DNA of 63,920 nucleotides, filler included, from Octopus bimaculoides (Eukaryota): assembly GCF_001194135.2 (NCBI RefSeq). It is 6 parts of 6 records of this genome, joined end to end, with 100 filler letters (N's around TTAATTAATTAA, not from the genome) between each part and the next. Parts side by side here need not be neighbours in the genome. Positions count along the whole stretch, not along the records: positions 25,269 to 40,920 come from NC_068992.1; 5 more parts are not named here. One strand, 5' to 3'. The notes under the pieces are model-generated. The model was given only the letters and a program-made list of their open reading frames with translations. It had not been told where the DNA came from and did no database searches. This document shows, piece by piece, positions 25,595-40,156 of the stretch. Position numbers and translations under genes: made by a program. Positions within the stretch are counted from its first letter, which is position 1; every line of letters starts with the position of its first letter.

Positions 25595-26885
25595 CATAGA
25601 GAGAGTGAGAGAGAGAGAGAGAGAGAGATGGGCGGTTGGAGGGAGGAAGAGAGTGAGGGATGGTGTTATACATGCACATATACATATATGTGTGACACTG
25701 ATTGCTGTAGAAAACTGTGCACGTCGTGTGTGTGTCTGTGTGCGCCTGTTTGTATGTGTGTGTGTGTATGTGTACAGGCATTTATACGTGCATGTATATA
25801 ACTAAAAGTACGAGAACAACGTTCTAGTGTTATAAATATATATTTGTTAGTTTTCCGTATGATCAATTTACCATTCATTTCATAATGACAGTCCAGTATG
25901 GACAAAACCGCCTACCAGATAATTAATGAGAAAAGATGTTATTGGTGTAAGAATTATAAACATTACGTTTAAATACGTTTATATGATATATAACGTATGT
26001 ATTTAGAATGTGAACATTATATCAGTTGTACATTTCTAAACACGTGTTTTTGTATAGAAGTAAATATATATACATATATATATATACATTTATATATNNN
26101 NNNNNNNNNNNNNNNNNNNNNNNNNNNNNNNNNNNNNNNNNNNNNNNNNNNNNNNNNNNNNNNNNNNNNNNNNNNNNNNNNNNNNNNNNNNNNNNNNNNN
26201 NNNNNNNNNNNNNNNNNNNNNNNNNNNNNNNNNNNNNNNNNNNNNNNNNNNNNNNNNNNNNNNNNNNNNNNNNNNNNNNNNNNNNNNNNNNNNNNNNNNN
26301 NNNNNNNNNNNNNNNNNNNNNNNNNNNNNNNNNNNNNNNNNNNNNNNNNNNNNNNNNNNNNNNNNNNNNNNNNNNNNNNNNNNNNNNNNNNNNNNNNNNN
26401 NNNNNNNNNNNNNNNNNNNATATATATATATATACATGTATATAAATGTTCATATATACATAACAATTCAAAAGAAAGTAAGAACATGGCATTTAATAAA
26501 AGTTTATTATCTGCTAGAATCAAACATAGTCCCTTACAGGTGTTTCGATTAAGCCTACCAGATTAAATAGCAACTATTAAAATCATTATATTAGGTAACA
26601 TCTCTTCAGAAGAGTAGAAAAATATGTATCGTTACGCTTTTTTATGTGTTGTATTGTAGGTTGTTTTAGTGGGCAATGGATAACTATGTGAATATAATTA
26701 GGGTTAGAAATAGGTAAATAAATAGAGGTTGAATAGTAATTTACAGTGAAGTAGAATATCATATGAATGAGGAGATAAAATAAATACTTAGGTAAGTTGT
26801 TTATAAGACTGAGAGAATCTTATATAAAAATGATATATAAACATATATTAACACCGGTCAAAAGACATTCGTCTTTAGTTTATGC

Positions 26886-26928
<43 letters not shown>

Positions 26929-26946
26929 TAGATATATGCATCTATC

Positions 26947-27007
<61 letters not shown>

Positions 27008-27829
27008 ACATATACATATATACACACACACAAACAATAGATACAAATATGTACGCAAATATGCTCGCATACATGGGGATACATGTATGTGCACCAATTC
27101 AGGTAAATGAATACATATAAAGAACAGCATACACATACGTATGTATATATATATATATATATATAAATATGTATATANNNNNNNNNNNNNNNNNNNNNNN
27201 NNNNNNNNNNNNNNNNNNNNNNNNNNNNNNNNNNNNNNNNNNNNNNNNNNNNNNNNNNNNNNNNNNNNNNNNNNNNNNNNNNNNNNNNNNNNNNNNNNNN
27301 NNNNNNNNNNNNNNNNNNNNNNNNNNNNNNNNNNNNNNNNNNNNNNNNNNNNNNNNNNNNNNNNNNNNNNNNNNNNNNNNNNNNNNNNNNNNNNNNNNNN
27401 NNNNNNNNNNNNNNNNNNNNNNNNNNNNNNNNNNNNNNNNNNNNNNNNNNNNNNNNNNNNNNNNNNNNNNNNNNNNNNNNNNNNNNNNNNNNNNNNNNNN
27501 NNNNNNNNNNNNNNNNNNNNNNNNNNNNNNNNNNNNNNNNNNNNNNNNNNNNNNNNNNNNNNNNNNNNNNNNNNNNNNNNNNNNNNNNNNNNNNNNNNNN
27601 NNNNNNNNNNNNNNNNNNNNNNNNNNNNNNNNNNNNNNNNNNNNNNNNNNNNNNNNNNNNNNNNNNNNNNNNNNNNNNNNNNNNNNNNNNNNNNNATATA
27701 TATATATATATATATATACACGTTAATATTTCTATGTGATAATAGCAAAATTTTACATTAACCTGGTCGATTGATCGATACTTTTGCTAAAGTGCAATTT
27801 TATTATTCATTAACAAGATTACTATTGAC

Positions 27830-28940: not shown

Positions 28941-29276
28941 TACAAAGGTACACTCACATATATATGCATATATATAGGAACGCATAATAAATATACGTAT
29001 AATACATATATACGTAGATATATAATATATATACACACACATGCTAATAGACGAAACACTCAGTCCCTGAGTCACTCTGTAGCTTCTTCCAATTATTAGA
29101 AAAAAACACATATATATATACTCAGGTTTTCATTTGTATTGCGCTTTCTCCAGCATCGAATACATACACACGCATATTTTCACACACAGCCCGAGCAGAC
29201 ATTCACTATTATACACCCACACAGATACATACATACATACATATATATATATACATATTTGTGTGTGAGTACGTGT

Positions 29277-29369
<93 letters not shown>

Positions 29370-31817
29370 CACATATATATGAATTGTAGCGTAATCTATG
29401 ATTTTCAAACAACCATTTGTTTATTTCTCTCATCTAATAACCTGTCTGACACATAAATGTCTCTAATGTTTATAAAACTGTACTGATTTCGCTTGTATTT
29501 GCGAAGTGTATCTATTTATATATCTCAGAGCATGTATGTACTTTAGTATGTGTGTTTTACGTAGGTTTGTGTGTATATTTATTCATGTGATCATATATGT
29601 GTGTTTATGTAAGCCTATGATTGATTTCTCTATTTTTCTTGATGTTCTTGGTGTTAAATTGAAATAACAACAACAGCCTCATGTCTGTTCAATAATTGAT
29701 TGGAATTATGAATTCGTTCACATTTTCTAATCAGTTGCATCTGTCGATAGGTCGTCAATATTATGACCTTACCAAAATTCTGGAAACAAATTTCAACAGC
29801 ATCATTCCCTCGTAGACATAATGCAATATATCATGTAATGCATCGTAGAAATACTGTATAGTAATCGTATTACTCATTAAAAAAAGATTTCTTACTATGT
29901 ATTCGTGAGTAATAACGTCGATATTTTTAGGTTTGTAATAGTGCAAGTGTTGCTTCTTTCCATGTTCGCTAATGACGTTCTGTGTATATGGTATTTGTCA
30001 CATATCTCGTTAGTTCAAATCGCTCTGATGACAGGTTTCTGAAGGATGTTCTTTCCGGATTTTCAAATTTCATGTAAAGAATCTGGCCCACTTTCTGTGT
30101 CCATACATATAGGCTATTCGAAACCTTTCGTGGAGGAAATGGTAGTGTGTCCTTACGGATTTTCTCACTTTTTACGACACTTCTTTAAATTGTTATTATG
30201 TGTGAATTCGACTTCACCACCAGTTACAGTAGTTATTACCAAGTCCCAAATTTATAAAATATTGTTTTAGATTTATGGAACACGAGATTCATGGAAACGT
30301 AAATGTCTATGAGCAATTAGACAAAAGAATGACCTACCAATAACCACTCAATTCCCCGTTATTGTGTATTATTTTCTTATATTTCAAAAGGGAATTTTTC
30401 CGAAATATTTTAGCATCAAAGGCTAGTATAATATCTTTCATTGACAATCTCTCTGATTTCTTCATAATTTTTTTTTTGCAAATGATTATTCAATTGCAGG
30501 TGTTTAGAAGCCATTTAAAAACACACAAAAACCGTTAGATCCACTCCAACATTTAAATTTAATTTGTCAAAATATTTTCGTTGCTTTGAGACCGCAATCA
30601 GGTCGCTTGCTATGCAAGTGCATCTCCGTAAATGATTATTCAATTATATTGTAACACGTCAAGTAAAGTACATTACTCTTTTAAACACTATTCTTTTGTT
30701 AGTGTCCTTCACAAATATTAACTTGTGTGTATAGTTATAAGAAATTGTGCATATATGTTAAGAAATACTGTAAAACGTTTGTTTTGGTGGTTATTTTGCT
30801 CAACAATGATCGAACATGCTATGGCGAAAGAATTGCACATCTCGTCTTGTAATACATAATTGCATTATGTTTCTGCCTTTCTTTCAGATTTGATGGGAAT
30901 CTAGTTGTTATTTCTAGATGGTTGAGAAATTGCGGAAATATTCATGCAGTAACATATTAATTTTGTCACAGGGAAATGCATTTGGCAGAGTATATTTCTA
31001 ACGTTTCTTTCTATCTTCATTTGTAATATCTCGGTAAATCAAAATCTAACTTGAATTCGAATTGAGAACAACATAGGGTGTCATTCATAAACAAAGTGTT
31101 GGCAAGGCAAATTTGAACGAAGCATCAGAATGTTGTTTAATATACATTGCAGTAATTTTTCTGCGTTTTCTGGCTCCGAAATCAAATTGCACCGTGTTAA
31201 TTTTGCTTTGTTGCCTTTAATCCTTTCAGTATTGCATTTTATAGTACAAGTCACGAACAGGGGTCAATTTCATTCTCCTTCTTTCCCTTTCTCATACTAT
31301 CTCTCATAAAATCGTCTATGTTGCATTGTGGGAAAGGATATTGGAGAACACTCAAAGAGAATGGTTTTAATAAGAATTAGAATTTTTTTTCTTGTAGTAA
31401 AACCTAGTGTGATACTGAAGGCAGCCAATGGAATATAGAAATGCAACACATCAGGAAAGCGACATCCAAGACCGGGAAAAATAAAGATAACGTAAGTCGT
31501 TTTTTTCTCTCAGAGTCAGAGTTAGCTTCATGTTGGCTTCGTTTATAATCATATCATGTATAGCGTAAACTTCGATAAGTTTGCATGCGGTGTCGTATAA
31601 GTGACAGGCATGGTATTTCTCTTCAGAGAAAGAAACATGTTTATTTGCTATTTTTCTGTTAACGATAAACCTCGCTTTCTGAAACAGCAGAACTCTCCTA
31701 GTACTCACAATACAAGAATTTATGTATGAATTATATTTGATGCTGCCTTAGTCTCAGACTATTTCTTACTTATTACCCGTAATATCAATACAGCATATTC
31801 ATGTAAGTTGTTATACA

Positions 31818-32028
31818 GGCTGCGGGCTGGCAGAATGGTTAGCACGCCGGGCTAAATGTTCAACGAAACTTCGTCCGTCTTTACATTCTGAGATCAAATA
31901 TCACTGAGGTCGATTTTACTTTTCATTCTTTCGAAGCCTGTAAAATAAGTACCAGATGGGCACCGGGATCAATGTAATCGAATTTTCCCCTCCCACCTAA
32001 TTGCTGGCATTGTACCAACATTTCAAAC
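31818..32028 (+). mobile_element. SINE family B copy
   Basis: ggctggcagaatggttagcacgccgggc...gaggtcgattttacttttcattctttcgaagcctgtaaaataagtaccag. Confidence 0.8.
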
Positions 32029-33570
32029 AAATCTACGTTGTTATATGAATAATAAGCATGACGTTTTTAGGATATCATTTGTTATATTAAATAAATAACA
32101 AATGTCGATTAAAATTTATATCCTCTTCCTTTATAATTTTGATTTTAATCTTCATTTTGTTTTAACCAGTTACATGGAATTTACTTAAGGGACAAATGGA
32201 AACCATCACTTATTGCTTGTTATCAATCGTTAATTGCAAAAGAAAAATATATACCATTTTAGTAATGTCGAAATTAAATTTAATTTCGAATGTTTGCGTT
32301 AAAAGAGAAATCGATAATATTGTTTTTCGAAAGCTGAATGTTTTTGCTTTAGTAAGAATATTTTAATTTAAGTTCAATAACTTCTGTAGATATTGGTTAT
32401 AGAATATAGGGCTCTTCAAAGCCGATCTTGTTTTCCCTTGAAAGGTTTTTCAATTCAATTGCACTGCATCTTAAGTCCGGCAGTCTGGTCCAGCAACAAT
32501 TTTTCAATGTTTCTTGCTGCCATTTCGTGCTTAACTTTACGGAGTACTCAGCCAGGAAGTTTTGTGCTCTGAAACTTGAAAATGAATTATCCAGGTTAAT
32601 TGAAAATGTTTGCCATTTGATAGGAATCTGTGGAAGCTATATGAAAATTTAAATTTCTTTCATACTTTTACATTCTTTTACATTTTGGAAGATTCAATAT
32701 TGTAAAGAAGACATCTGGTGCGTTAACCGAAGCTAAATCCTAAAAAGAATTGTTTCACCTTCTGAAAAGACAAATAACCTATGTCAATTGTCAAATAAAG
32801 TATAGATGTAAAGTGAGAATATGTCGATAATTATATAACCCCGCATAAGCTCTGGTCAAAAAGACTTAAGAGGGTAATTTCAGTGGTCACTAAAATGTCT
32901 AGACTCACATCACTCACACGTGCTAGTGATAAAATACAGCTCTGTAAGTCGTTTTACATGGTCAGGCCTAAAGAGAATACACACATGTATTACGTTCTGA
33001 TTAGGAGAACCGCTTGTCTCAATATCTGGGAAATGGTTGGCTGAAAGAGTCAACAAGTATCCAGCACTCACCCAGAAGCATAAATATTTCCAGGTCAATA
33101 TCCGTGATACAAGAAATGGCAGACAGAAACCAATATCGAAGTCTATACTTGATATTGTGTTAAAATACGTCTTTTATTTTAGCATATCCCAAAGGACAAA
33201 ACAGTACATTAATTTTCAAATTCTATGTGCATATATTCTCTTATATTCCAACGCACTTAGGAGTTGTATCAATCCAGACTTAGAGGCAATAACACTTCAT
33301 ATAGTATATTTGAATAACTTAAGAATTAACTTTGCGTTAGCTTATAGGAATTGTTATACAAATATATTCTTTAGTTATATTCATATCGATAATGTTATAA
33401 ATGAATGATGGCAGTGAAGTATTGTGTTTGATAATGATGACAAATCTCCTATAGCAATATCGAACAGCATGCATCATTATGCAGCAATGTGGAAAATGCT
33501 TACGGCAGAAATAGTTTGCTGCAGTGCTGACGAAGTTTTCTTTCAATAGAATAAGTACAAACATCATTGT

Positions 33571-33760
33571 TAGGTCGCCGTGCGAAATGCTTAGCGGCAT
33601 TTCGTCCGTCTTCAGGTCCTGATTCAAATTCCGCCGAGGTCGACTTTGCCTTTCATTCTTTCGAGGTCGATAAAATAAATACCAGTTAAACACTGGCGTC
33701 GATGTAATCGACTTACCCTCTCCCCAAAGGTCATCCCTTGTGTCTAGAGTCGAAAGGATT
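33571..33760 (+). mobile_element. SINE family B copy
   Basis: gcgaaatgcttagcggcatttcgtccgtc...gattcaaattccgccgaggtcgactttgcctttcattctttcgaggtcgataaaataaataccag. Confidence 0.8.
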
Positions 33761-34058
33761 ATTATTATTATCAAGTTATTTATTTATTATAATTATTATT
33801 AATGATAATACGGATAATAATAGCATCGATAACAACATTAACAATGATGATAATAATAATAATAATGATGATTTTTTTTTATTGGCCACAAAGGCCTCAA
33901 ACATGAAGGACAACATCGAAGGACGAGTTACAACACAAAAAGATTGCAAAATCAAAAGCATGTCGGGTTAACTTCAATCAAGGGGAGATACCACCACATG
34001 AAAGGATATACTAGAGGATATATAATAGAAAGTAGAGAAATGAATAATAATAAATAAA

Positions 34059-34345
34059 TACATTATTTACATTATTTACAATTGACGGATATTTCTTCTC
34101 ATTTTGTTTGTTGTTAACACGACGTTTCGGCTGATATACCCTCCAGCCTTCATCAGGTGTCTTGGGGGAAATTCTGAACCTGGATTCTCATTCCTAAGGT
34201 ATTTTTCGATGTTGTTGTTATTATCATTATTATTATCATTATTATTATTATTATTATTATCATTATTAGTCAGGTCACTGCCTGGAATCGAACTCGAAAT
34301 ATTGGGGTTAGTAGCCCGCGCTCTTAACCACTACGCCATATGCCC
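34059..34345 (-). mobile_element. tRNA-headed non-autonomous element with a hammerhead-containing 3' region
   Basis: Minus strand order: A box TGGCGTAGTGG (34328-34338), B box GAGTTCGATTCC (34284-34295), (AAT)n linker, HHR (34116-34161), AT-rich tail with aatgtaaat repeats. Confidence 0.75.
34116..34161 (-). ncRNA. Minimal type I hammerhead ribozyme, family 1
   Basis: GACAC-CUGAUGA-A-GGCUG[GAGGGUAUAU]CAGCC-GAA-ACGU-C-GUGUU. Stem I 5 bp, stem II 5 bp, palindromic stem III ACGU, GUC cleavage triplet; one extra A after A9. Confidence 0.8.
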
Positions 34346-34350
34346 GTAGT

Positions 34351-34520
34351 GCATATGGCGTAGGAATGAAAACCTATGTTCGAAATTTCTCGAAGACACC
34401 TGATGAGGGTATATCAGCCGAAACGTTGTGTTAACAACAAACAAGATGAGGACAAATATCTGTCAATTGTAAATAATGTAAATATTGTACATAATTCCTC
34501 ATTTCTCTTAAATATAGAAC
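34351..34520 (+). mobile_element. Inverted, internally deleted second copy of the tRNA-HHR element
   Basis: gcatatggcgtag joined directly to gaatga..., then gacacctgatgagggtatatcagccgaaacgttgtgttaacaacaaacaagatgagg..., the reverse complement of 34059-34195. Confidence 0.8.
34395..34432 (+). ncRNA. Hammerhead family 1 copy with shortened stem II
   Basis: GACAC-CUGAUGA-GGGUAUAUCAGCC-GAA-ACGU-U-GUGUU. An 8-nt deletion removes the 5' arm of stem II, leaving about 2 bp. Confidence 0.55.
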
Positions 34521-34802: not shown

Positions 34803-35152
34803 AGAGGAAACCTCTCTTATTGTTTTCGATTTGACCCTACTAATACATTCCCTGCTTTTAGGTCACTTTAAACAGAACCCTTGATTCAATAACACTGTGT
34901 ATCAACTCTTATTTGGAATGACCAATTTCAAAACTGTTGGATTTTACTGATAGGGTATTGGAATCTTAATAATGGATTTACAAATGCAATGACCAATCTT
35001 AAAGATTATTGGATTTTACTCACAAGGTATTGGAATCTTATAAGTATACCATTCTGCCTAAAAAATGGATTTACAAATACAATATTCCCTACATTCACTC
35101 TCTATTTCCTATCTTATCTAAACTAATTATTGCTTAACCATCCTCTCACACC

Positions 35153-35174: not shown

Positions 35175-35391
35175 NNNNNNNNNNTATAGGTTATGAAGGG
35201 TATTGGATTCAACCAAACCCAAAGATACAGGTAATACCGAGTAAGTGCTGTATACCGGCTAGTTTGCCCCTGTCGTTGTATAAACACGAGTTGGGAATAT
35301 AACATAGGTCGTGTATTAGCGTGTGTATGTTTAAAGAGAGAAAAAGATAAAGAGACCAATGGCAAAGTTAGAAATATATTTTATGGATAAA

Positions 35392-35440
35392 GTCTTACAG
35401 CTGTTTCAGGGAAAATTCAATGTATCCCTTCATCGGAGAC
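35392..35440 (-). ncRNA. Minimal type I hammerhead ribozyme, family 2
   Basis: GUCU-CCGAUGA-AGGGA[UACAUUGAAUUU]UCCCU-GAA-ACAGCUGU-A-AGAC. Stem I 4 bp, stem II 5 bp, palindromic stem III ACAGCUGU, GUA triplet; core has C at position 4. Confidence 0.75.
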
Positions 35441-35764
35441 GGTAATAGTAGAGGAATGGATTATTACATCTATAATAGGAGATTTGTTGTAAGAAGTAAG
35501 AGCGATGCGCCGAAAAAAGAACAAAGAAGAGACAGTACTTGGAGTGTAGCTTCATTCCATATACGATATGATATATATCCACCTTTGCTACCACAATTAT
35601 CTCCGGAAAATACCCACAAGGATTCTTTATATGGATGTTTACTGCTGGAATGAAGCTACACTCCAAGTATTGTTTCTTCTTTGTTCTTTTGTCAGCGCAT
35701 CGCTCTCACTTCTTACTACAAATCTCCTCTTATAGATATAATAATTCATTACCCTACTATTACC

Positions 35765-35813
35765 GTCTCCGATGAAGGGATACATTGGATTTTCCCTGAA
35801 ACAGCTGTAAGAC
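35765..35813 (+). ncRNA. Minimal type I hammerhead ribozyme, family 2
   Basis: GUCU-CCGAUGA-AGGGA[UACAUUGGAUUU]UCCCU-GAA-ACAGCUGU-A-AGAC; predicted cleavage after 35809. Confidence 0.75.
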
Positions 35814-36373
35814 TTTATCCATAAAATATATTTCTAACTTTGCCATTGGTCTCTTTATATTTTTCTCTCTTTATATATATATATATATATATATNNNNNN
35901 NNNNNNNNNNNNNNNNNNNNNNNNNNNNNNNNNNNNNNNNNNNNNNNNNNNNNNNNNNNNNNNNNNNNNNNNNNNNNNNNNNNNNNNNNNNNNNNNNNNN
36001 NNNNNNNNNNNNNNNNNNNNNNNNNNNNNNNNNNNNNNNNNNNNNNNNNNNNNNNNNNNNNNNNNNNNNNNNNNNNNNNNNNNNNNNNNNNNNNNNNNNN
36101 NNNNNNNNNNNNNNNNNNNNNNNNNNNNNNNNNNNNNNNNNNNNNNNNNNNNNNNNNNNNNNNNNNNNNNNNNNNNNNNNNNNNNNNNNNNNNNNNNNNN
36201 NNNNNNNNNNNNNNNNNNNNNNNNNNNNNNNNNNNNNNNNNNNNNNNNNNNNNNNNNNNNNNNNNNNNNNNNNNNNNNNNNNNNNNNNNNNNNNNNNNNN
36301 NNNNNNNNNNNNNNNNNNNNNNNNNNNNNNNNNNNNNNNNNNNNNNNNNNNNNNNNNNNNNNNNNNNNNNNNN

Positions 36374-36463: not shown

Positions 36464-37050
36464 CTCCAAAATAATAAGGTCGACTTTACCTTTCAATGAA
36501 ATAAATACCAATTGAACGATGGGTTCTTGTAATCCCCTCCCTCCTGAAAATGTCAGGCTTTTTGCTTAGAATAGAATTTGTATTAGCTGTTAGCTTTCTC
36601 TCTTTTTCATGTTTGCATATATTGTGCCTAAGCAATGTTCACGTACGGCAACTGTCAGATCTATTATTTCTGCATTTAGCCTTGAGCTTTCAAGCTATTG
36701 TTAGTTAGTTTGCATGTGTGTTTGTTTATGTTTTCTCGCTTACTTCCTCTCTTCATCGAGATTTGTGGTATATCAAACATTGAATGTATTATTCTCTCCA
36801 TTTGTTTTTCATGTTTTAAACTCTATCTTGTTTTCTTCACTTTTTTAATCCTCTCAATTGTCATGTTCTTCCCTAAATCTTTTATTTCATATTTTGTGTA
36901 ATATAGTTTCCGGGTGGTGCATCGCGTTTCCATATATACAGAGAGATAAGCATTTCTTTTATCATATTTTCTTACTAAACTTGCAAACCACAAATCGTTT
37001 CTTGCCTACTATTTTTCTCGTTTCACTTATGTTATTTTGTAACGGTGACC

Positions 37051-37155
37051 GGTAAATTCCACCGCGGCAAATTCCACCATGGAAAATTCCACCAGGTAAA
37101 TTTCCCCATAGGTAAATTCCACCACGGTATATTCCCCCGTGGTAAATTTCGCCAT
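37051..37155 (+). repeat. About 15-bp tandem repeat (GGTAAATTCCACCAY) x7
   Basis: Seven units read directly; an inverted copy lies at 38577-38621. Confidence 0.85.
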
Positions 37156-38576: not shown

Positions 38577-38621
38577 TGGGTGGAATTTACCATGGTGGAA
38601 TATACCGTGGTGGAATTTACC
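38577..38621 (-). repeat. Inverted copy of the 15-bp tandem repeat x3
   Basis: Reverse complement ggtaaattccaccac ggtatattccaccat ggtaaattccacc matches units 5-7 of 37051-37155. Confidence 0.8.
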
Positions 38622-40156
38622 TAGAGGATTTTATTTGCATTAGATCCTACATTACTTGAGTACAAGTCAGCTATAATCTATCTATATCAACTCTGAAATC
38701 GTGGTTTCACAACCATGTCATTAATTCCCTGATTTCTCCATCTATTGACTTTTCAATTCATTTCACATCCAGTTTATATTGAAGCTGTAATTTACAACTA
38801 GGAATGCTAGAGTATTTATACCTACTATATTATTTCTCTTATTGACTTCAGTTTTTGATATTAGTCTGACTCTTTTATAGTACTAACTCTAAACTATATC
38901 TCCCATTTCTGTCTTTATTTATCAGTTTCCTTTACATAGCACATTTGTATGGGTGCTTTTGGTTTACTTCTCTGATTTAGGCGTCTAATTTAATAATATT
39001 CTCAGCTCTAGCTAAATTACCTCTTCGTATTAGAAGTAGCTTTAGTGCATTTGTTTAATCCTCTGATCAATCGTATGATTTTACTGAATTTAAAAACAGC
39101 TTTTAGTTCTGTATTGTCCATGTAAATATATTGAAGGCAGCTATGTATACAGACGTTGATGCGCAGTTCTTTCTGTAGCGTCTATATTCAACGGTGGTTT
39201 GGTGCAACAAGTATGCTAATGGAGTCGGAACGAAGTACAAGAACAGGGGACATAATGATCCCTTCTTAAAAGATATCCCCTCTTATTTATGCAGGAACAA
39301 TTTTGATAATGTTATGCGATGATATTGTTTTTAATATCATTAATTGCCTGACATATTTCATTAGTTCCTGAGTTGTTTTATTTAGACTTGGTTTCTGTAT
39401 CTGGTTTACAACATCCTTTAAGTGAGATCGTGTGTTGAAACAAATTTTGTCTAAGGAGAGTCATTATGCCAAAATTATTAACACGCGCGCACTATTTATC
39501 AATTGGATAAATACCCAACTAATTATTTTATTGTTTGCTTATAATAGGTAAACAGTAAATAATTTGTTTTGTTTTTGTTTGTTGTTGTTGTTTCTTTATC
39601 AAAGCTGTATTGTTGCTATTTCTAACCTTTTCAGTGACTGTTTTTGTATGTGTGAATAATATTGGCATAATGACTTTCCTAGACACAACAAAATTTGTTT
39701 TGAGTTTATCCAGAATCAGAAATGAATGTTACATAAAGGCTTTCAGTATCTGCCTAGATCACACCATTTTACCGTCTCCTATTTCTACTAACTTCTATAA
39801 AGTCTCGGTTCACTATTAACTCTTCTTTACAGCCATACTTTCATTTGCCGCACCATTTCTCTAGCAATATATTATTATTCACCAGACATGTAACCCAACT
39901 TCTAATGAAGAATGGTTGTGGAAGTTCTGTGTGCTTCGTCAAGGATTCATTCACTTATAGATATGTGGGATTTTGTTATTGTGCAAAAATTAAGTCAGGA
40001 GGAGGAGGCGAGGAGGAGACATAACGATTTGAGAATGCTTATCAGGGTATTGTAAATTATTTCACCATTATTGTAAGAATTCCATCATTTTCAAGAGAAA
40101 CCCAATTTAATTAAACTTATAAACATCTTTTTTCAGCAGCATTTTTCATTCCACTG

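What the first reader, a model, noticed from the sequence alone, without database searches (positions are those of the whole stretch)
34059..34345. tRNA-promoter element carrying a Penelope-type hammerhead ribozyme: candidate ribozyme SINE
Seen: one strand carries, in order, a tRNA-like head with A and B boxes, an (AAT)n linker, an intact minimal type I HHR (GACAC-CUGAUGA-A-GGCUG..CAGCC-GAA-ACGU-C-GUGUU) and an AT-rich tail. Known: minimal HHRs with a short palindromic stem III are hallmarks of PLE pseudo-LTRs and are thought to cleave as dimers, and SINEs usually borrow their 3' end from the autonomous partner. Inference: this is a Pol III-transcribed non-autonomous retroelement that took a PLE 3' end with its ribozyme and may be mobilised by PLE RT and GIY-YIG endonuclease. 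I do not know of such SINEs as an established class. Predicted cleavage is between 34121 and 34120.
Basis: partly seen in the sequence, partly recalled or inferred. Interest (0 to 1): 0.9.

Follow-up and report, generated by a model that had tools for sequence, protein, structure and literature searches.

The report
tRNA-headed hammerhead retroelement, inverted pair
A short mobile-DNA insertion in an invertebrate-like draft genome joins a tRNA-derived RNA polymerase III promoter to a minimal, Penelope-type hammerhead ribozyme module. It sits head-to-head with a second, broken copy, and it resembles the known ribozyme-bearing SINE-like elements of schistosomes rather than a new class.

Summary
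On the minus strand lie a tRNA-derived head with an exact A box and a 1-mismatch B box at tRNA spacing, an (AAT)17 linker, and an intact minimal type I hammerhead (34161→34116). Cleavage is predicted between 34121 and 34120, followed by an AT-rich tail. Neither motif appeared in 1000–2000 shuffles. Rfam and ARAGORN recognise neither.

- The hammerhead unit (163 nt, 34196→34034) has an inverted second copy on the plus strand (34361→34508, 80% identical). An 8-nt deletion has killed its ribozyme. It is preceded by 13 nt of the same head's 5' end.
- An unrelated inverted pair 1.1 kb away (35326–35879) carries a hammerhead-like motif, begins with the same GGAATGA and ends similarly (TTTCTCT), and has no head.
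- Ribozyme-bearing tRNA-derived SINE-like elements (Smα/Sjα) have been known since 1998.

Inverted head-to-head copies are the published signature of Penelope-type integration, so mobilisation by Penelope machinery is plausible. No further copy could be retrieved from any collection. Whether head and ribozyme unit form a propagating family or a one-off chimera therefore stays open, at roughly even odds. I rate it a new variant of a known kind, of moderate interest.

The parts
34270..34349 (-). tRNA-derived head (type 2 Pol III promoter-like). A box at 34338->34328, B box at 34294->34284.
   Evidence: The A box is exact and the B box has 1 mismatch. They start 44 nt apart, and this occurs in 0 of 2000 shuffles. 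It does not fold as a tRNA: ARAGORN and Rfam find nothing. It shares CTRCGGGC..TGGC..TGGTTA..GGGCTA with the head of another SINE at 31815.
34212..34268 (-). (AAT)n linker, read as TTA on the plus strand. A 15-nt unique joint (34197-34211) follows it.
   Evidence: TRF reports 34218-34268, period 3, 17 copies. Sequence read.
34034..34196 (-). Copy A of the 163-nt hammerhead-bearing unit (TAGGAATGA...CATTTCTCT), including the AT-rich tail.
   Evidence: Aligns with copy B over 163 columns at 79.8% identity.
34116..34161 (-). Intact minimal type I hammerhead. Helix I is 34161-34157 paired with 34120-34116. CUGAUGA is 34156-34150. The unpaired A is 34149. Helix II is 34148-34143 paired with 34134-34129. 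GAA is 34128-34126, ACGU is 34125-34122 and C17 is 34121.
   Evidence: Descriptor hit with 0 of 1000 shuffles. Coordinates.
34120..34121 (-). Predicted self-cleavage site, 3' of C17.
   Evidence: Follows from the hammerhead consensus applied to the sequence. Not tested experimentally.
34361..34508 (+). Copy B of the unit, inverted relative to copy A. Its hammerhead remnant is at 34395-34432.
   Evidence: An 8-nt deletion removes the 5' strand of helix II, and C17 has become U. The rest of the ribozyme region is identical to copy A.
34351..34363 (+). 13-nt copy of the head's 5' end (GCATATGGCGTAG), joined directly to copy B. With 34331-34343 it forms a perfect 13-nt inverted repeat separated by 7 nt.
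   Evidence: Read directly from the sequence. Weak BLAST hit.
33954..33957 (-). First T4 run downstream of the head on the sense strand, a candidate Pol III terminator about 77 nt beyond the end of the unit.
   Evidence: Only 9.9% of 312-nt windows in the piece lack a T4 run, but shuffles of the element itself lack one 42% of the time.
35326..35879 (.). Family 2, a second inverted pair. Arms are 35326-35559 (sense on the minus strand) and 35646-35879 (sense on the plus strand), 234 nt each and 93.6% identical, with an 86-nt spacer. Each arm carries GUCU-CCGAUGA-AGGGA..UCCCU-GAA-ACAGCUGU-A-AGAC. It starts with TGGAATGA, ends with TTTCTCTCTTTA, and has no head.
   Evidence: The relaxed descriptor hits both arms, against a mean of 0.003 hits per shuffle.

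Best explanation
The locus 34034-34508 is one old retrotransposition product of Penelope type. It consists of two copies of a 163-nt non-coding unit carrying a minimal hammerhead. The copies are joined head-to-head, with their 3' ends pointing outward.

Copy A is full length. It reads tRNA-derived Pol III head, then (AAT)n, then the unit. Copy B keeps only the first 13 nt of the head, fused directly to the unit. Both arms were therefore most likely copied from one composite template, head-linker-unit.

Proposed mechanism (inferred):
1. Pol III starts at the head and reads through the unit, which has no terminator, into the flank.
2. The uncleaved RNA is recognised through its Penelope-derived 3' module by a Penelope-like reverse transcriptase / GIY-YIG endonuclease acting in trans.
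3. Target-primed reverse transcription, with the Penelope-typical second inverted copy, produces the pair.

The ribozyme cannot form helix III in cis. It could cleave only as a double hammerhead with a second RNA. Cleavage would separate the promoter head from the 3' module, so the transposing RNA must be the uncleaved one.

Shown here: the motifs, their order and strand, the inverted pair, and the shared head fragment. Inferred: Pol III transcription, Penelope mobilisation, and status as a family.
For: - Both motifs are non-random.
- The features of the ribozyme match the published description of Penelope minimal hammerheads.
- Other minimal hammerheads with the same CUGAUGA-N-GGCU..AGCC-GAAACGU layout occur in low-GC, ORF-free metagenome contigs, which I take (inferred, not shown) to be invertebrate host DNA.
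- The inverted pair has a junction within about 7 nt of the head's 5' end, and the same 13 nt of head lie on both arms.
- Inverted adjacent copies are typical of Penelope-like insertions. Pairs of minimal hammerheads on opposite strands, 100-700 bp apart, have been reported.
- A second hammerhead-like inverted pair lies 1.1 kb away. This makes a generic DNA-level accident unlikely.
- There is no T4 run from the head to 77 nt beyond the unit.
- The head resembles the head of a conventional SINE in the same piece.
- Precedent exists in Sm-alpha and Sj-alpha.
Against: - Only this one locus is available. No other copy was found by DNA patterns or by translated-ORF searches.
- Family 2 begins with the same GGAATGA and ends similarly, has no head, and has T4 runs on its sense strand. 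The unit type therefore does not need a Pol III head.
- Copy B begins exactly at the unit boundary, which is what an independent unit would show.
- A microsatellite between head and body is unusual for a SINE. It would fit the tail of a separately captured RNA.
- The absence of T4 runs is not significant given the element's own composition.
- No clear target-site duplication was found.
- No Penelope ORF lies in the piece.
- The active dimer fold is not the predicted ground state: -22.9 kcal/mol against -28.4 for two monomers.
Confidence: 0.48

Rival explanations
1. The 163-nt hammerhead unit is an independent, headless, non-autonomous Penelope-type element, like family 2. It usually inserts as an inverted pair. 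Under this reading the tRNA-like head plus (AAT)n at the centre is a one-off. Either the reverse transcriptase switched template from the 5' end of the unit RNA onto a small tRNA-derived or SINE RNA with an (AAU)n tail, followed by snap-back copying that made arm B, or the head was acquired in some other single event. No head-plus-ribozyme family would then exist.
For: - Family 2 has the same architecture, begins with the same GGAATGA and ends with a similar TTTCTCT, and has no head.
- Copy B starts exactly at the unit boundary.
- The microsatellite sits where the 3' tail of a captured RNA would lie.
- A SINE with a simple-repeat tail exists in the same piece.
- Most minimal hammerheads are dispersed, headless motifs.
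- None of the 31 other minimal-hammerhead loci has A or B boxes upstream.
Against: - The head is in the promoter-competent orientation, with no terminator before the end of the unit.
- Both arms carry the head's 5' terminus. This needs an extra snap-back step if the chimera arose within a single event.
- No target-site duplication flanks the head plus linker, as a nested insertion would require.
Confidence: 0.37
2. This is a DNA-level structure, not a retrotransposition product. It is either a fold-back inverted duplication at a break next to a tRNA-like SINE, or a foldback / MITE-like DNA transposon with long terminal inverted repeats that happens to contain hammerhead-like sequence.
For: - Two arms with outward-facing ends around a unique centre is also how long-TIR elements look.
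- A direct repeat ATAGAA lies 3-5 nt outside both ends.
- Both families have outer ends beginning AGAGA.
Against: - Two independent inverted pairs within 1.5 kb both carry hammerhead-type motifs at the same relative position. That is the published signature of Penelope-like elements.
- The ATAGAA repeat is not adjacent to the ends, and the context is AT-rich.
- The symmetry centre falls within about 7 nt of the head's 5' end. A random break would do that about 2% of the time (my estimate).
Confidence: 0.1
3. This is a chance juxtaposition: hammerhead-like and tRNA-like motifs arising by chance in AT-rich repetitive DNA.
For: Rfam and ARAGORN do not recognise either part.
Against: 0 of 1000 and 0 of 2000 shuffles reproduce the two motifs. 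The ribozyme region is the best-conserved part between copies A and B.
Confidence: 0.02

Closest known systems
Sm-alpha / Sj-alpha SINE-like retroposons of Schistosoma (Ferbeyre 1998; Laha 2000; as described in PMC6765202 and PMC2770079)
   Same: A tRNA-derived, Pol III-type promoter region and a type I hammerhead in one short non-coding retroposon. Cleavage separates the promoter from part of the element, so single cleaved copies cannot propagate.
   Different: - Sm-alpha carries a canonical hammerhead recognised by the Rfam model. This one is a minimal variant that no Rfam model detects.
[quoted passage not shown] This locus is an inverted pair with no tandem repeat.
- This element has an internal (AAT)n.
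- Sequence homology to Sm-alpha was not tested.
Minimal hammerheads of Penelope-like element pseudo-LTRs (Cervera & de la Pena 2014; Lunse et al. 2017)
   Same: The core, a short helix I, an unpaired nucleotide after A9, G10.1-C11.1, and a palindromic 15.2-16.2 with no helix III, which predicts activity only as a dimer. Pairs on opposite strands a few hundred bp apart also match.
   Different: No reverse transcriptase / GIY-YIG ORF or pseudo-LTR tandem lies in the 15.6-kb piece. A tRNA-like head lies upstream on the same strand, which is not reported for these motifs.
Animal non-LTR retrozymes (Cervera & de la Pena 2020; Li, Clavereau & Pollet, bioRxiv 2026)
   Same: Short non-coding elements of 150-400 nt with a type I hammerhead, proposed to depend on Penelope-like elements.
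   Different: Retrozymes are tandem arrays that give circular RNAs, and no fixed promoter module is described for them. This locus has no tandem array, is an inverted pair, and carries a Pol III head.
Conventional tRNA-derived SINEs with a LINE-derived tail
   Same: A head with A and B boxes, a body and tail without Pol III terminators, and probable dependence on an autonomous partner through the 3' module.
   Different: The 3' module is of Penelope hammerhead type rather than LINE-derived. The integration product is an inverted pair. Copy number and target-site duplications are not established.

Membership tests
Hammerhead ribozyme, type I, Penelope-type minimal variant | Catalytic core: CUGANGA ... 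GAAA, and a cleavage nucleotide H17 that is not G. | tested here: met
   CUGAUGA is at 34156-34150, GAA-A at 34128-34125, and C17 at 34121.
Hammerhead ribozyme, type I, Penelope-type minimal variant | Open-ended helix I of 4-5 bp, and helix II closed by G10.1-C11.1. | tested here: met
   Helix I is 5 bp (GACAC/GUGUU). Helix II is 6 bp (GGCUGG/UCAGCC) with G10.1-C11.1.
Hammerhead ribozyme, type I, Penelope-type minimal variant | [quoted passage not shown] | tested here: met
   The unpaired A is at 34149. ACGU at 34125-34122 would close a 2-nt loop, which is impossible in cis. Criteria taken from PMC4209133.
Hammerhead ribozyme, type I, Penelope-type minimal variant | Covariation in helices I and II across family members. 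| tested here: inconclusive
   Only two copies are available. The stems are identical where both are present, and copy B has lost the 5' strand of helix II.
Hammerhead ribozyme, type I, Penelope-type minimal variant | Self-cleavage, as a dimer. | not testable with these tools
   The double-hammerhead fold evaluates at -22.9 kcal/mol, against -28.4 for two monomers. A bench assay is needed.
Rfam hammerhead families (Hammerhead_1, _3, _II, HH9, HH10) | A match to the covariance model. | tested here: not met
   No hit at E<=10, even on a 76-nt stretch.
tRNA-derived SINE | Internal Pol III promoter: A and B boxes at tRNA-like spacing. | tested here: met
   The A box is exact, the B box has 1 mismatch, and they start 44 nt apart. 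0 of 2000 shuffles reproduce this.
tRNA-derived SINE | No Pol III terminator (T4 or longer) inside the element. | tested here: met
   There is none from 34349 to 33958 on the sense strand. Statistical weight is weak.
tRNA-derived SINE | Many dispersed copies sharing the same head-body junction. | tested here: inconclusive
   The piece holds only this locus. Every collection I could search returned no further copy. The source genome itself was not searchable.
tRNA-derived SINE | A 3' end shared with an autonomous partner. | not testable with these tools
   No Penelope-like or LINE ORF lies in the piece, and the source genome is unavailable.
tRNA-derived SINE | Target-site duplication. | tested here: inconclusive
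   The only candidate is ATAGAA, lying 3-5 nt outside both ends in AT-rich sequence.
Penelope-like element insertion | An inverted copy adjacent at the 5' end, forming an inverted repeat. | tested here: met
   Copies A and B lie head-to-head. Criterion taken from PMC8557442.
Penelope-like element insertion | An ORF encoding reverse transcriptase plus GIY-YIG endonuclease, and a pseudo-LTR tandem. | tested here: not met
   No ORF in the piece exceeds 145 aa apart from artefacts running through N gaps. Pfam gave no hit on 10 ORFs. No tandem copy is present. At most this is a non-autonomous derivative.
Non-LTR retrozyme | Tandem repeats of hammerhead-bearing monomers. | tested here: not met
   TRF finds no such array. 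The copies are inverted, not tandem.

The most novel reading that the evidence does not exclude
A propagating SINE family outside flatworms in which a tRNA-derived Pol III head drives an RNA whose 3' module is a Penelope-type minimal-hammerhead unit, and which integrates in the Penelope manner as inverted pairs. That would be direct genomic evidence that Penelope-like reverse transcriptase / GIY-YIG machinery mobilises Pol III transcripts in trans. It would also suggest that the hammerhead-bearing 3' module serves as the recognition element rather than as a processing ribozyme.
Probability: 0.4. Interest if true: 0.65.

Novelty: new variant of a known kind. Interest (0 to 1): 0.45.

Why it matters
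How Penelope-like elements recognise their RNA is still unknown. So is what their universally conserved minimal hammerheads are for. A short Pol III-driven passenger carrying only the hammerhead-bearing 3' module would give a minimal, tractable substrate for trans-mobilisation assays. It would show that the uncleaved RNA is the transposition template. It would also link three literatures that are still treated separately: schistosome ribozyme SINEs, animal retrozymes, and dispersed minimal hammerheads. If the head turns out to be a one-off capture, the locus is simply one more dispersed Penelope-type hammerhead pair. It would then be ordinary for invertebrate genomes.

Tried and rejected
Searches for more copies. 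None retrieved another copy of this element (family 1):
- BLAST of the element against the piece found only copies A and B.
- Exact-protein look-ups of two window ORFs found nothing.
- I used a translated antisense ORF, with the microsatellite masked, as a proxy DNA search of 5.8 billion proteins. Nothing was found.
- A translated neighbouring-SINE ORF, tried in order to identify the host, found nothing.
- Four DNA-pattern scans of viral contigs gave either 7 stretches that I did not examine and presume to be chance matches, or nothing.
- One metagenome scan returned 31 loci. These belong to other minimal-hammerhead families or are GC-rich loci with long ORFs that I take to be bacterial chance hits. 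None belongs to this family and none has a tRNA head upstream.
- A literal search for sequence strings in papers found nothing.

Other tests:
- Rfam at permissive thresholds returned no tRNA and no hammerhead. Its microRNA hits lie on microsatellites and on a palindrome, so I take them to be repeat artefacts.
I replaced it with a scan of 10 ORFs, which gave no domains.
- The target-site duplication search was inconclusive.
- The absence of T4 runs is not significant against shuffles of the element.
- My first energy evaluations used a wrong register and then a pseudoknotted notation. One search corrects them.
- Two papers (Lunse 2017; Ferbeyre 1998) are not held in the library. I cite them only through reviews.

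The host organism was not identified. The SSR-rich, 32% GC, gap-ridden sequence would fit a decapod crustacean, but that is a guess.

Full report
**1. What is in the sequence**

Read on the minus strand, the region contains the following, in order:
- A tRNA-like head, 34349->34270.
- An (AAT)n array, reported by TRF at 34218-34268 with period 3 and 17 copies, followed by a 15-nt unique joint.
- A hammerhead motif: GACAC-CUGAUGA-A-GGCUGG..UCAGCC-GAA-ACGU-C-GUGUU, 34161->34116.
- An AT-rich tail.

**2. Is it more than chance?**

I wrote a strict descriptor for the minimal hammerhead. It requires:
- helix I of at least 4 bp;
- CUGANGA, followed by 0-1 unpaired nucleotide;
- helix II of at least 4 bp closed by G10.1-C11.1;
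- GAAA, a palindromic 0-6 nt insert, U16.1, and a non-G at position 17.

It hits exactly once on both strands of the 13.4 kb of non-N sequence, at this site. It hits 0 of 1000 dinucleotide shuffles.

In the head, the A box TGGCGTAGTGG (34338->34328) is exact and the B box AGTTCGATTCC (34294->34284) has one mismatch. They start 44 nt apart, which corresponds to tRNA positions 8 and 52. This pairing occurs in 0 of 2000 shuffles.

Curated tools recognise neither part. ARAGORN finds no tRNA. Rfam returns no tRNA and no hammerhead family, even at E<=10 on stretches of 76-91 nt. The head is therefore a degenerate tRNA derivative that keeps the promoter boxes. The ribozyme is of the minimal kind, which lacks the helix III that the Rfam models expect.

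**3.

The 163 nt from TAGGAATGA to CATTTCTCT (copy A, 34196->34034) recur on the plus strand at 34361->34508 (copy B). The two are 79.8% identical over 163 columns.

In copy B an 8-nt deletion removes the 5' strand of helix II, and C17 has become U. Otherwise the ribozyme region is the best-conserved part of the alignment. Copy B's ribozyme is dead or crippled.

The two copies meet head-to-head. Copy B is directly preceded by GCATATGGCGTAG (34351-34363). These are the same 13 nt that begin the head of copy A on the other strand, and the two form a perfect 13-nt inverted repeat 7 nt apart. Copy B lacks the rest of the head and the microsatellite. The join falls at a shared TAG.

**4. A second family with the same layout**

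A self-comparison of the piece shows a palindrome at 35326-35879.
- Its arms are 234 nt long and 93.6% identical, around an 86-nt spacer.
- Each arm carries GUCU-CCGAUGA-AGGGA..UCCCU-GAA-ACAGCUGU-A-AGAC. This is hammerhead-like, with C in place of U4 and a perfectly palindromic helix III.
- A descriptor relaxed to allow one core mismatch finds copy A plus both of these arms. Shuffles give a mean of 0.003 hits.
- As in family 1, the 5' ends meet at the centre, the 3' ends point outward, and the motif lies about 70-110 nt from the 3' end.
- Both families begin with (T)GGAATGA, and both end in TTTCTCT or close to it.
- Family 2 has no tRNA-like head and has three T4+ runs per arm on its sense strand.

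**5. Comparison with the literature**

Cervera & de la Pena (PMC4209133) list the following for metazoan Penelope-like minimal hammerheads:
- a short helix I (4-5 bp) and a longer helix II;
- a G10.1-C11.1 pair;
- palindromic 15.2-16.2;
- activity only as dimers, and weak in vitro.

All the sequence features are met here. The same paper reports pairs of minimal hammerheads 100-700 bp apart on opposite strands.

Craig et al. [quoted passage not shown] They also report a bias towards microsatellites. Two independent inverted pairs carrying hammerhead-type motifs within 1.5 kb therefore look like a property of the element type, not a local DNA accident.

My metagenome scan, using a pattern taken from copy A, returned 31 loci. 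Most are low-GC stretches without long ORFs; I take them, without proof, to be invertebrate host DNA. They carry the same CUGAUGA-N-GGCU..AGCC-GAAACGU layout but have different flanks. None has A or B boxes upstream.

**6. How it would work**

Helix III cannot form in cis, because ACGU would have to close a 2-nt loop.
- The predicted monomer ground state is a rod at -14.2 kcal/mol.
- The double-hammerhead dimer evaluates at -22.9 kcal/mol, against -28.4 for two monomers.

This agrees with the published low activity.

Cleavage at 34121|34120 would separate the head plus ribozyme core (about 225 nt) from the 87-nt 3' tail. Both arms contain the sequence on both sides of the cleavage site, and it is contiguous. 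The template that was reverse-transcribed was therefore uncleaved.

On the sense strand there is no T4 run from the head to 33958. The first TTTT lies at 33957-33954. A Pol III transcript could therefore span the whole element. This feature is only weakly informative: 9.9% of windows in the piece lack a T4 run, and shuffles of the element itself lack one 42% of the time.

My model is as follows. A Pol III transcript of head-linker-unit is recognised through the Penelope-derived 3' module by a Penelope-like reverse transcriptase / GIY-YIG endonuclease in trans. It is then integrated with the typical inverted second copy. These steps are inferred, not shown.

**7. Family or one-off?**

For a composite template:
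- Both arms carry the head's 5' terminus.
- The symmetry centre lies within about 7 nt of the head's start.
- Orientation and the lack of a terminator fit a promoter role.
- The head resembles that of a conventional SINE 2.3 kb away.

Against a propagating family:
- Family 2 shows that this unit type exists without a head.
- Copy B begins exactly at the unit boundary.
- The internal microsatellite looks like the tail of a separately captured small RNA.
- There is no clear target-site duplication.
- No other copy could be retrieved by any route.

I put a true SINE-like family at about 0.48, a one-off chimera or capture at about 0.37, a DNA-level foldback or long-TIR element at about 0.10, and chance at about 0.02.

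**8. Novelty**

- Sm-alpha and Sj-alpha of schistosomes are tRNA-derived, apparently Pol III-transcribed SINE-like retroposons with a hammerhead (PMC6765202; PMC2770079; PMC8490949).
- Animal non-LTR retrozymes have been called a kind of SINE and proposed as Penelope dependants (PMC7761336; bioRxiv 10.64898/2026.07.22.740005).

Three things would be new if confirmed: a tRNA head combined with a minimal Penelope-type hammerhead module; Penelope-style inverted-pair integration of such an element; and its occurrence outside flatworms.

I rate it a new variant of a known kind, with interest 0.45. The decisive test is a copy census in the source genome, which the tools here could not reach.

Noticed in passing
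window 35326-35879: A second inverted pair (family 2). Its arms are 234 nt and 93.6% identical around an 86-nt spacer. Each arm carries a hammerhead-like motif with C at core position U4 and a palindromic helix III, ACAGCUGU. It begins with the same GGAATGA as the finding's unit and ends similarly (TTTCTCT). The right arm runs into (TA)n and an assembly gap.
   Followed up: partly
window 31815-32010 (+) and 33566-33760 (+): A conventional tRNA-headed SINE of another family (A box TGGCAGAATGG; core ...GGTCGATAAAATAAGTACCAG...GTCGATGTAATCGA). A headless relative at 74% identity ends in (ATT)n. The first ~40 nt of its head resemble the head in the finding.
   Followed up: partly
window 37050-37148 and 38579-38621: Inverted arrays of a 15-nt tandem repeat (CGGTAAATTCCACCA / GGTGGAATTTACCAT) flank an assembly gap. 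They may be the subterminal repeats of another transposon.
   Followed up: no
window 26880-27060, 29211-29400, 35515-35690: Permissive Rfam hits to microRNA families (mir-297, mir-3149, mir-466, MIR529 and others) are all below their gathering scores. They lie on (TG)n and (AT)n microsatellites and on the centre of the family-2 palindrome, so I take them to be repeat artefacts, not genes.
   Followed up: yes
window 34020-34520, either strand: A read-through transcript of the inverted pair is predicted to fold into a long imperfect hairpin (-205 kcal/mol over 501 nt). This is a possible source of small RNAs against the element.
   Followed up: no
L009, L012, L013, L015, L025, L035-L038 and other loci among L008-L038: Metagenome contigs with low GC and no long ORFs, which I take (not verified) to be invertebrate host DNA. 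They carry other minimal-hammerhead families with the same CUGAUGA-N-GGYU..AGCC-GAAACGU layout and complementary helix I arms, for example UUUAUUC / GAAUAAA. None has a tRNA head upstream.
   Followed up: partly
window 34914-35040 and 39438-39700: Short additional repeats: a direct pair at 34914-34968 / 34985-35040 (84% identical) and an inverted pair at 39438-39484 / 39650-39700 (83% identical). Their nature is unknown.
   Followed up: no
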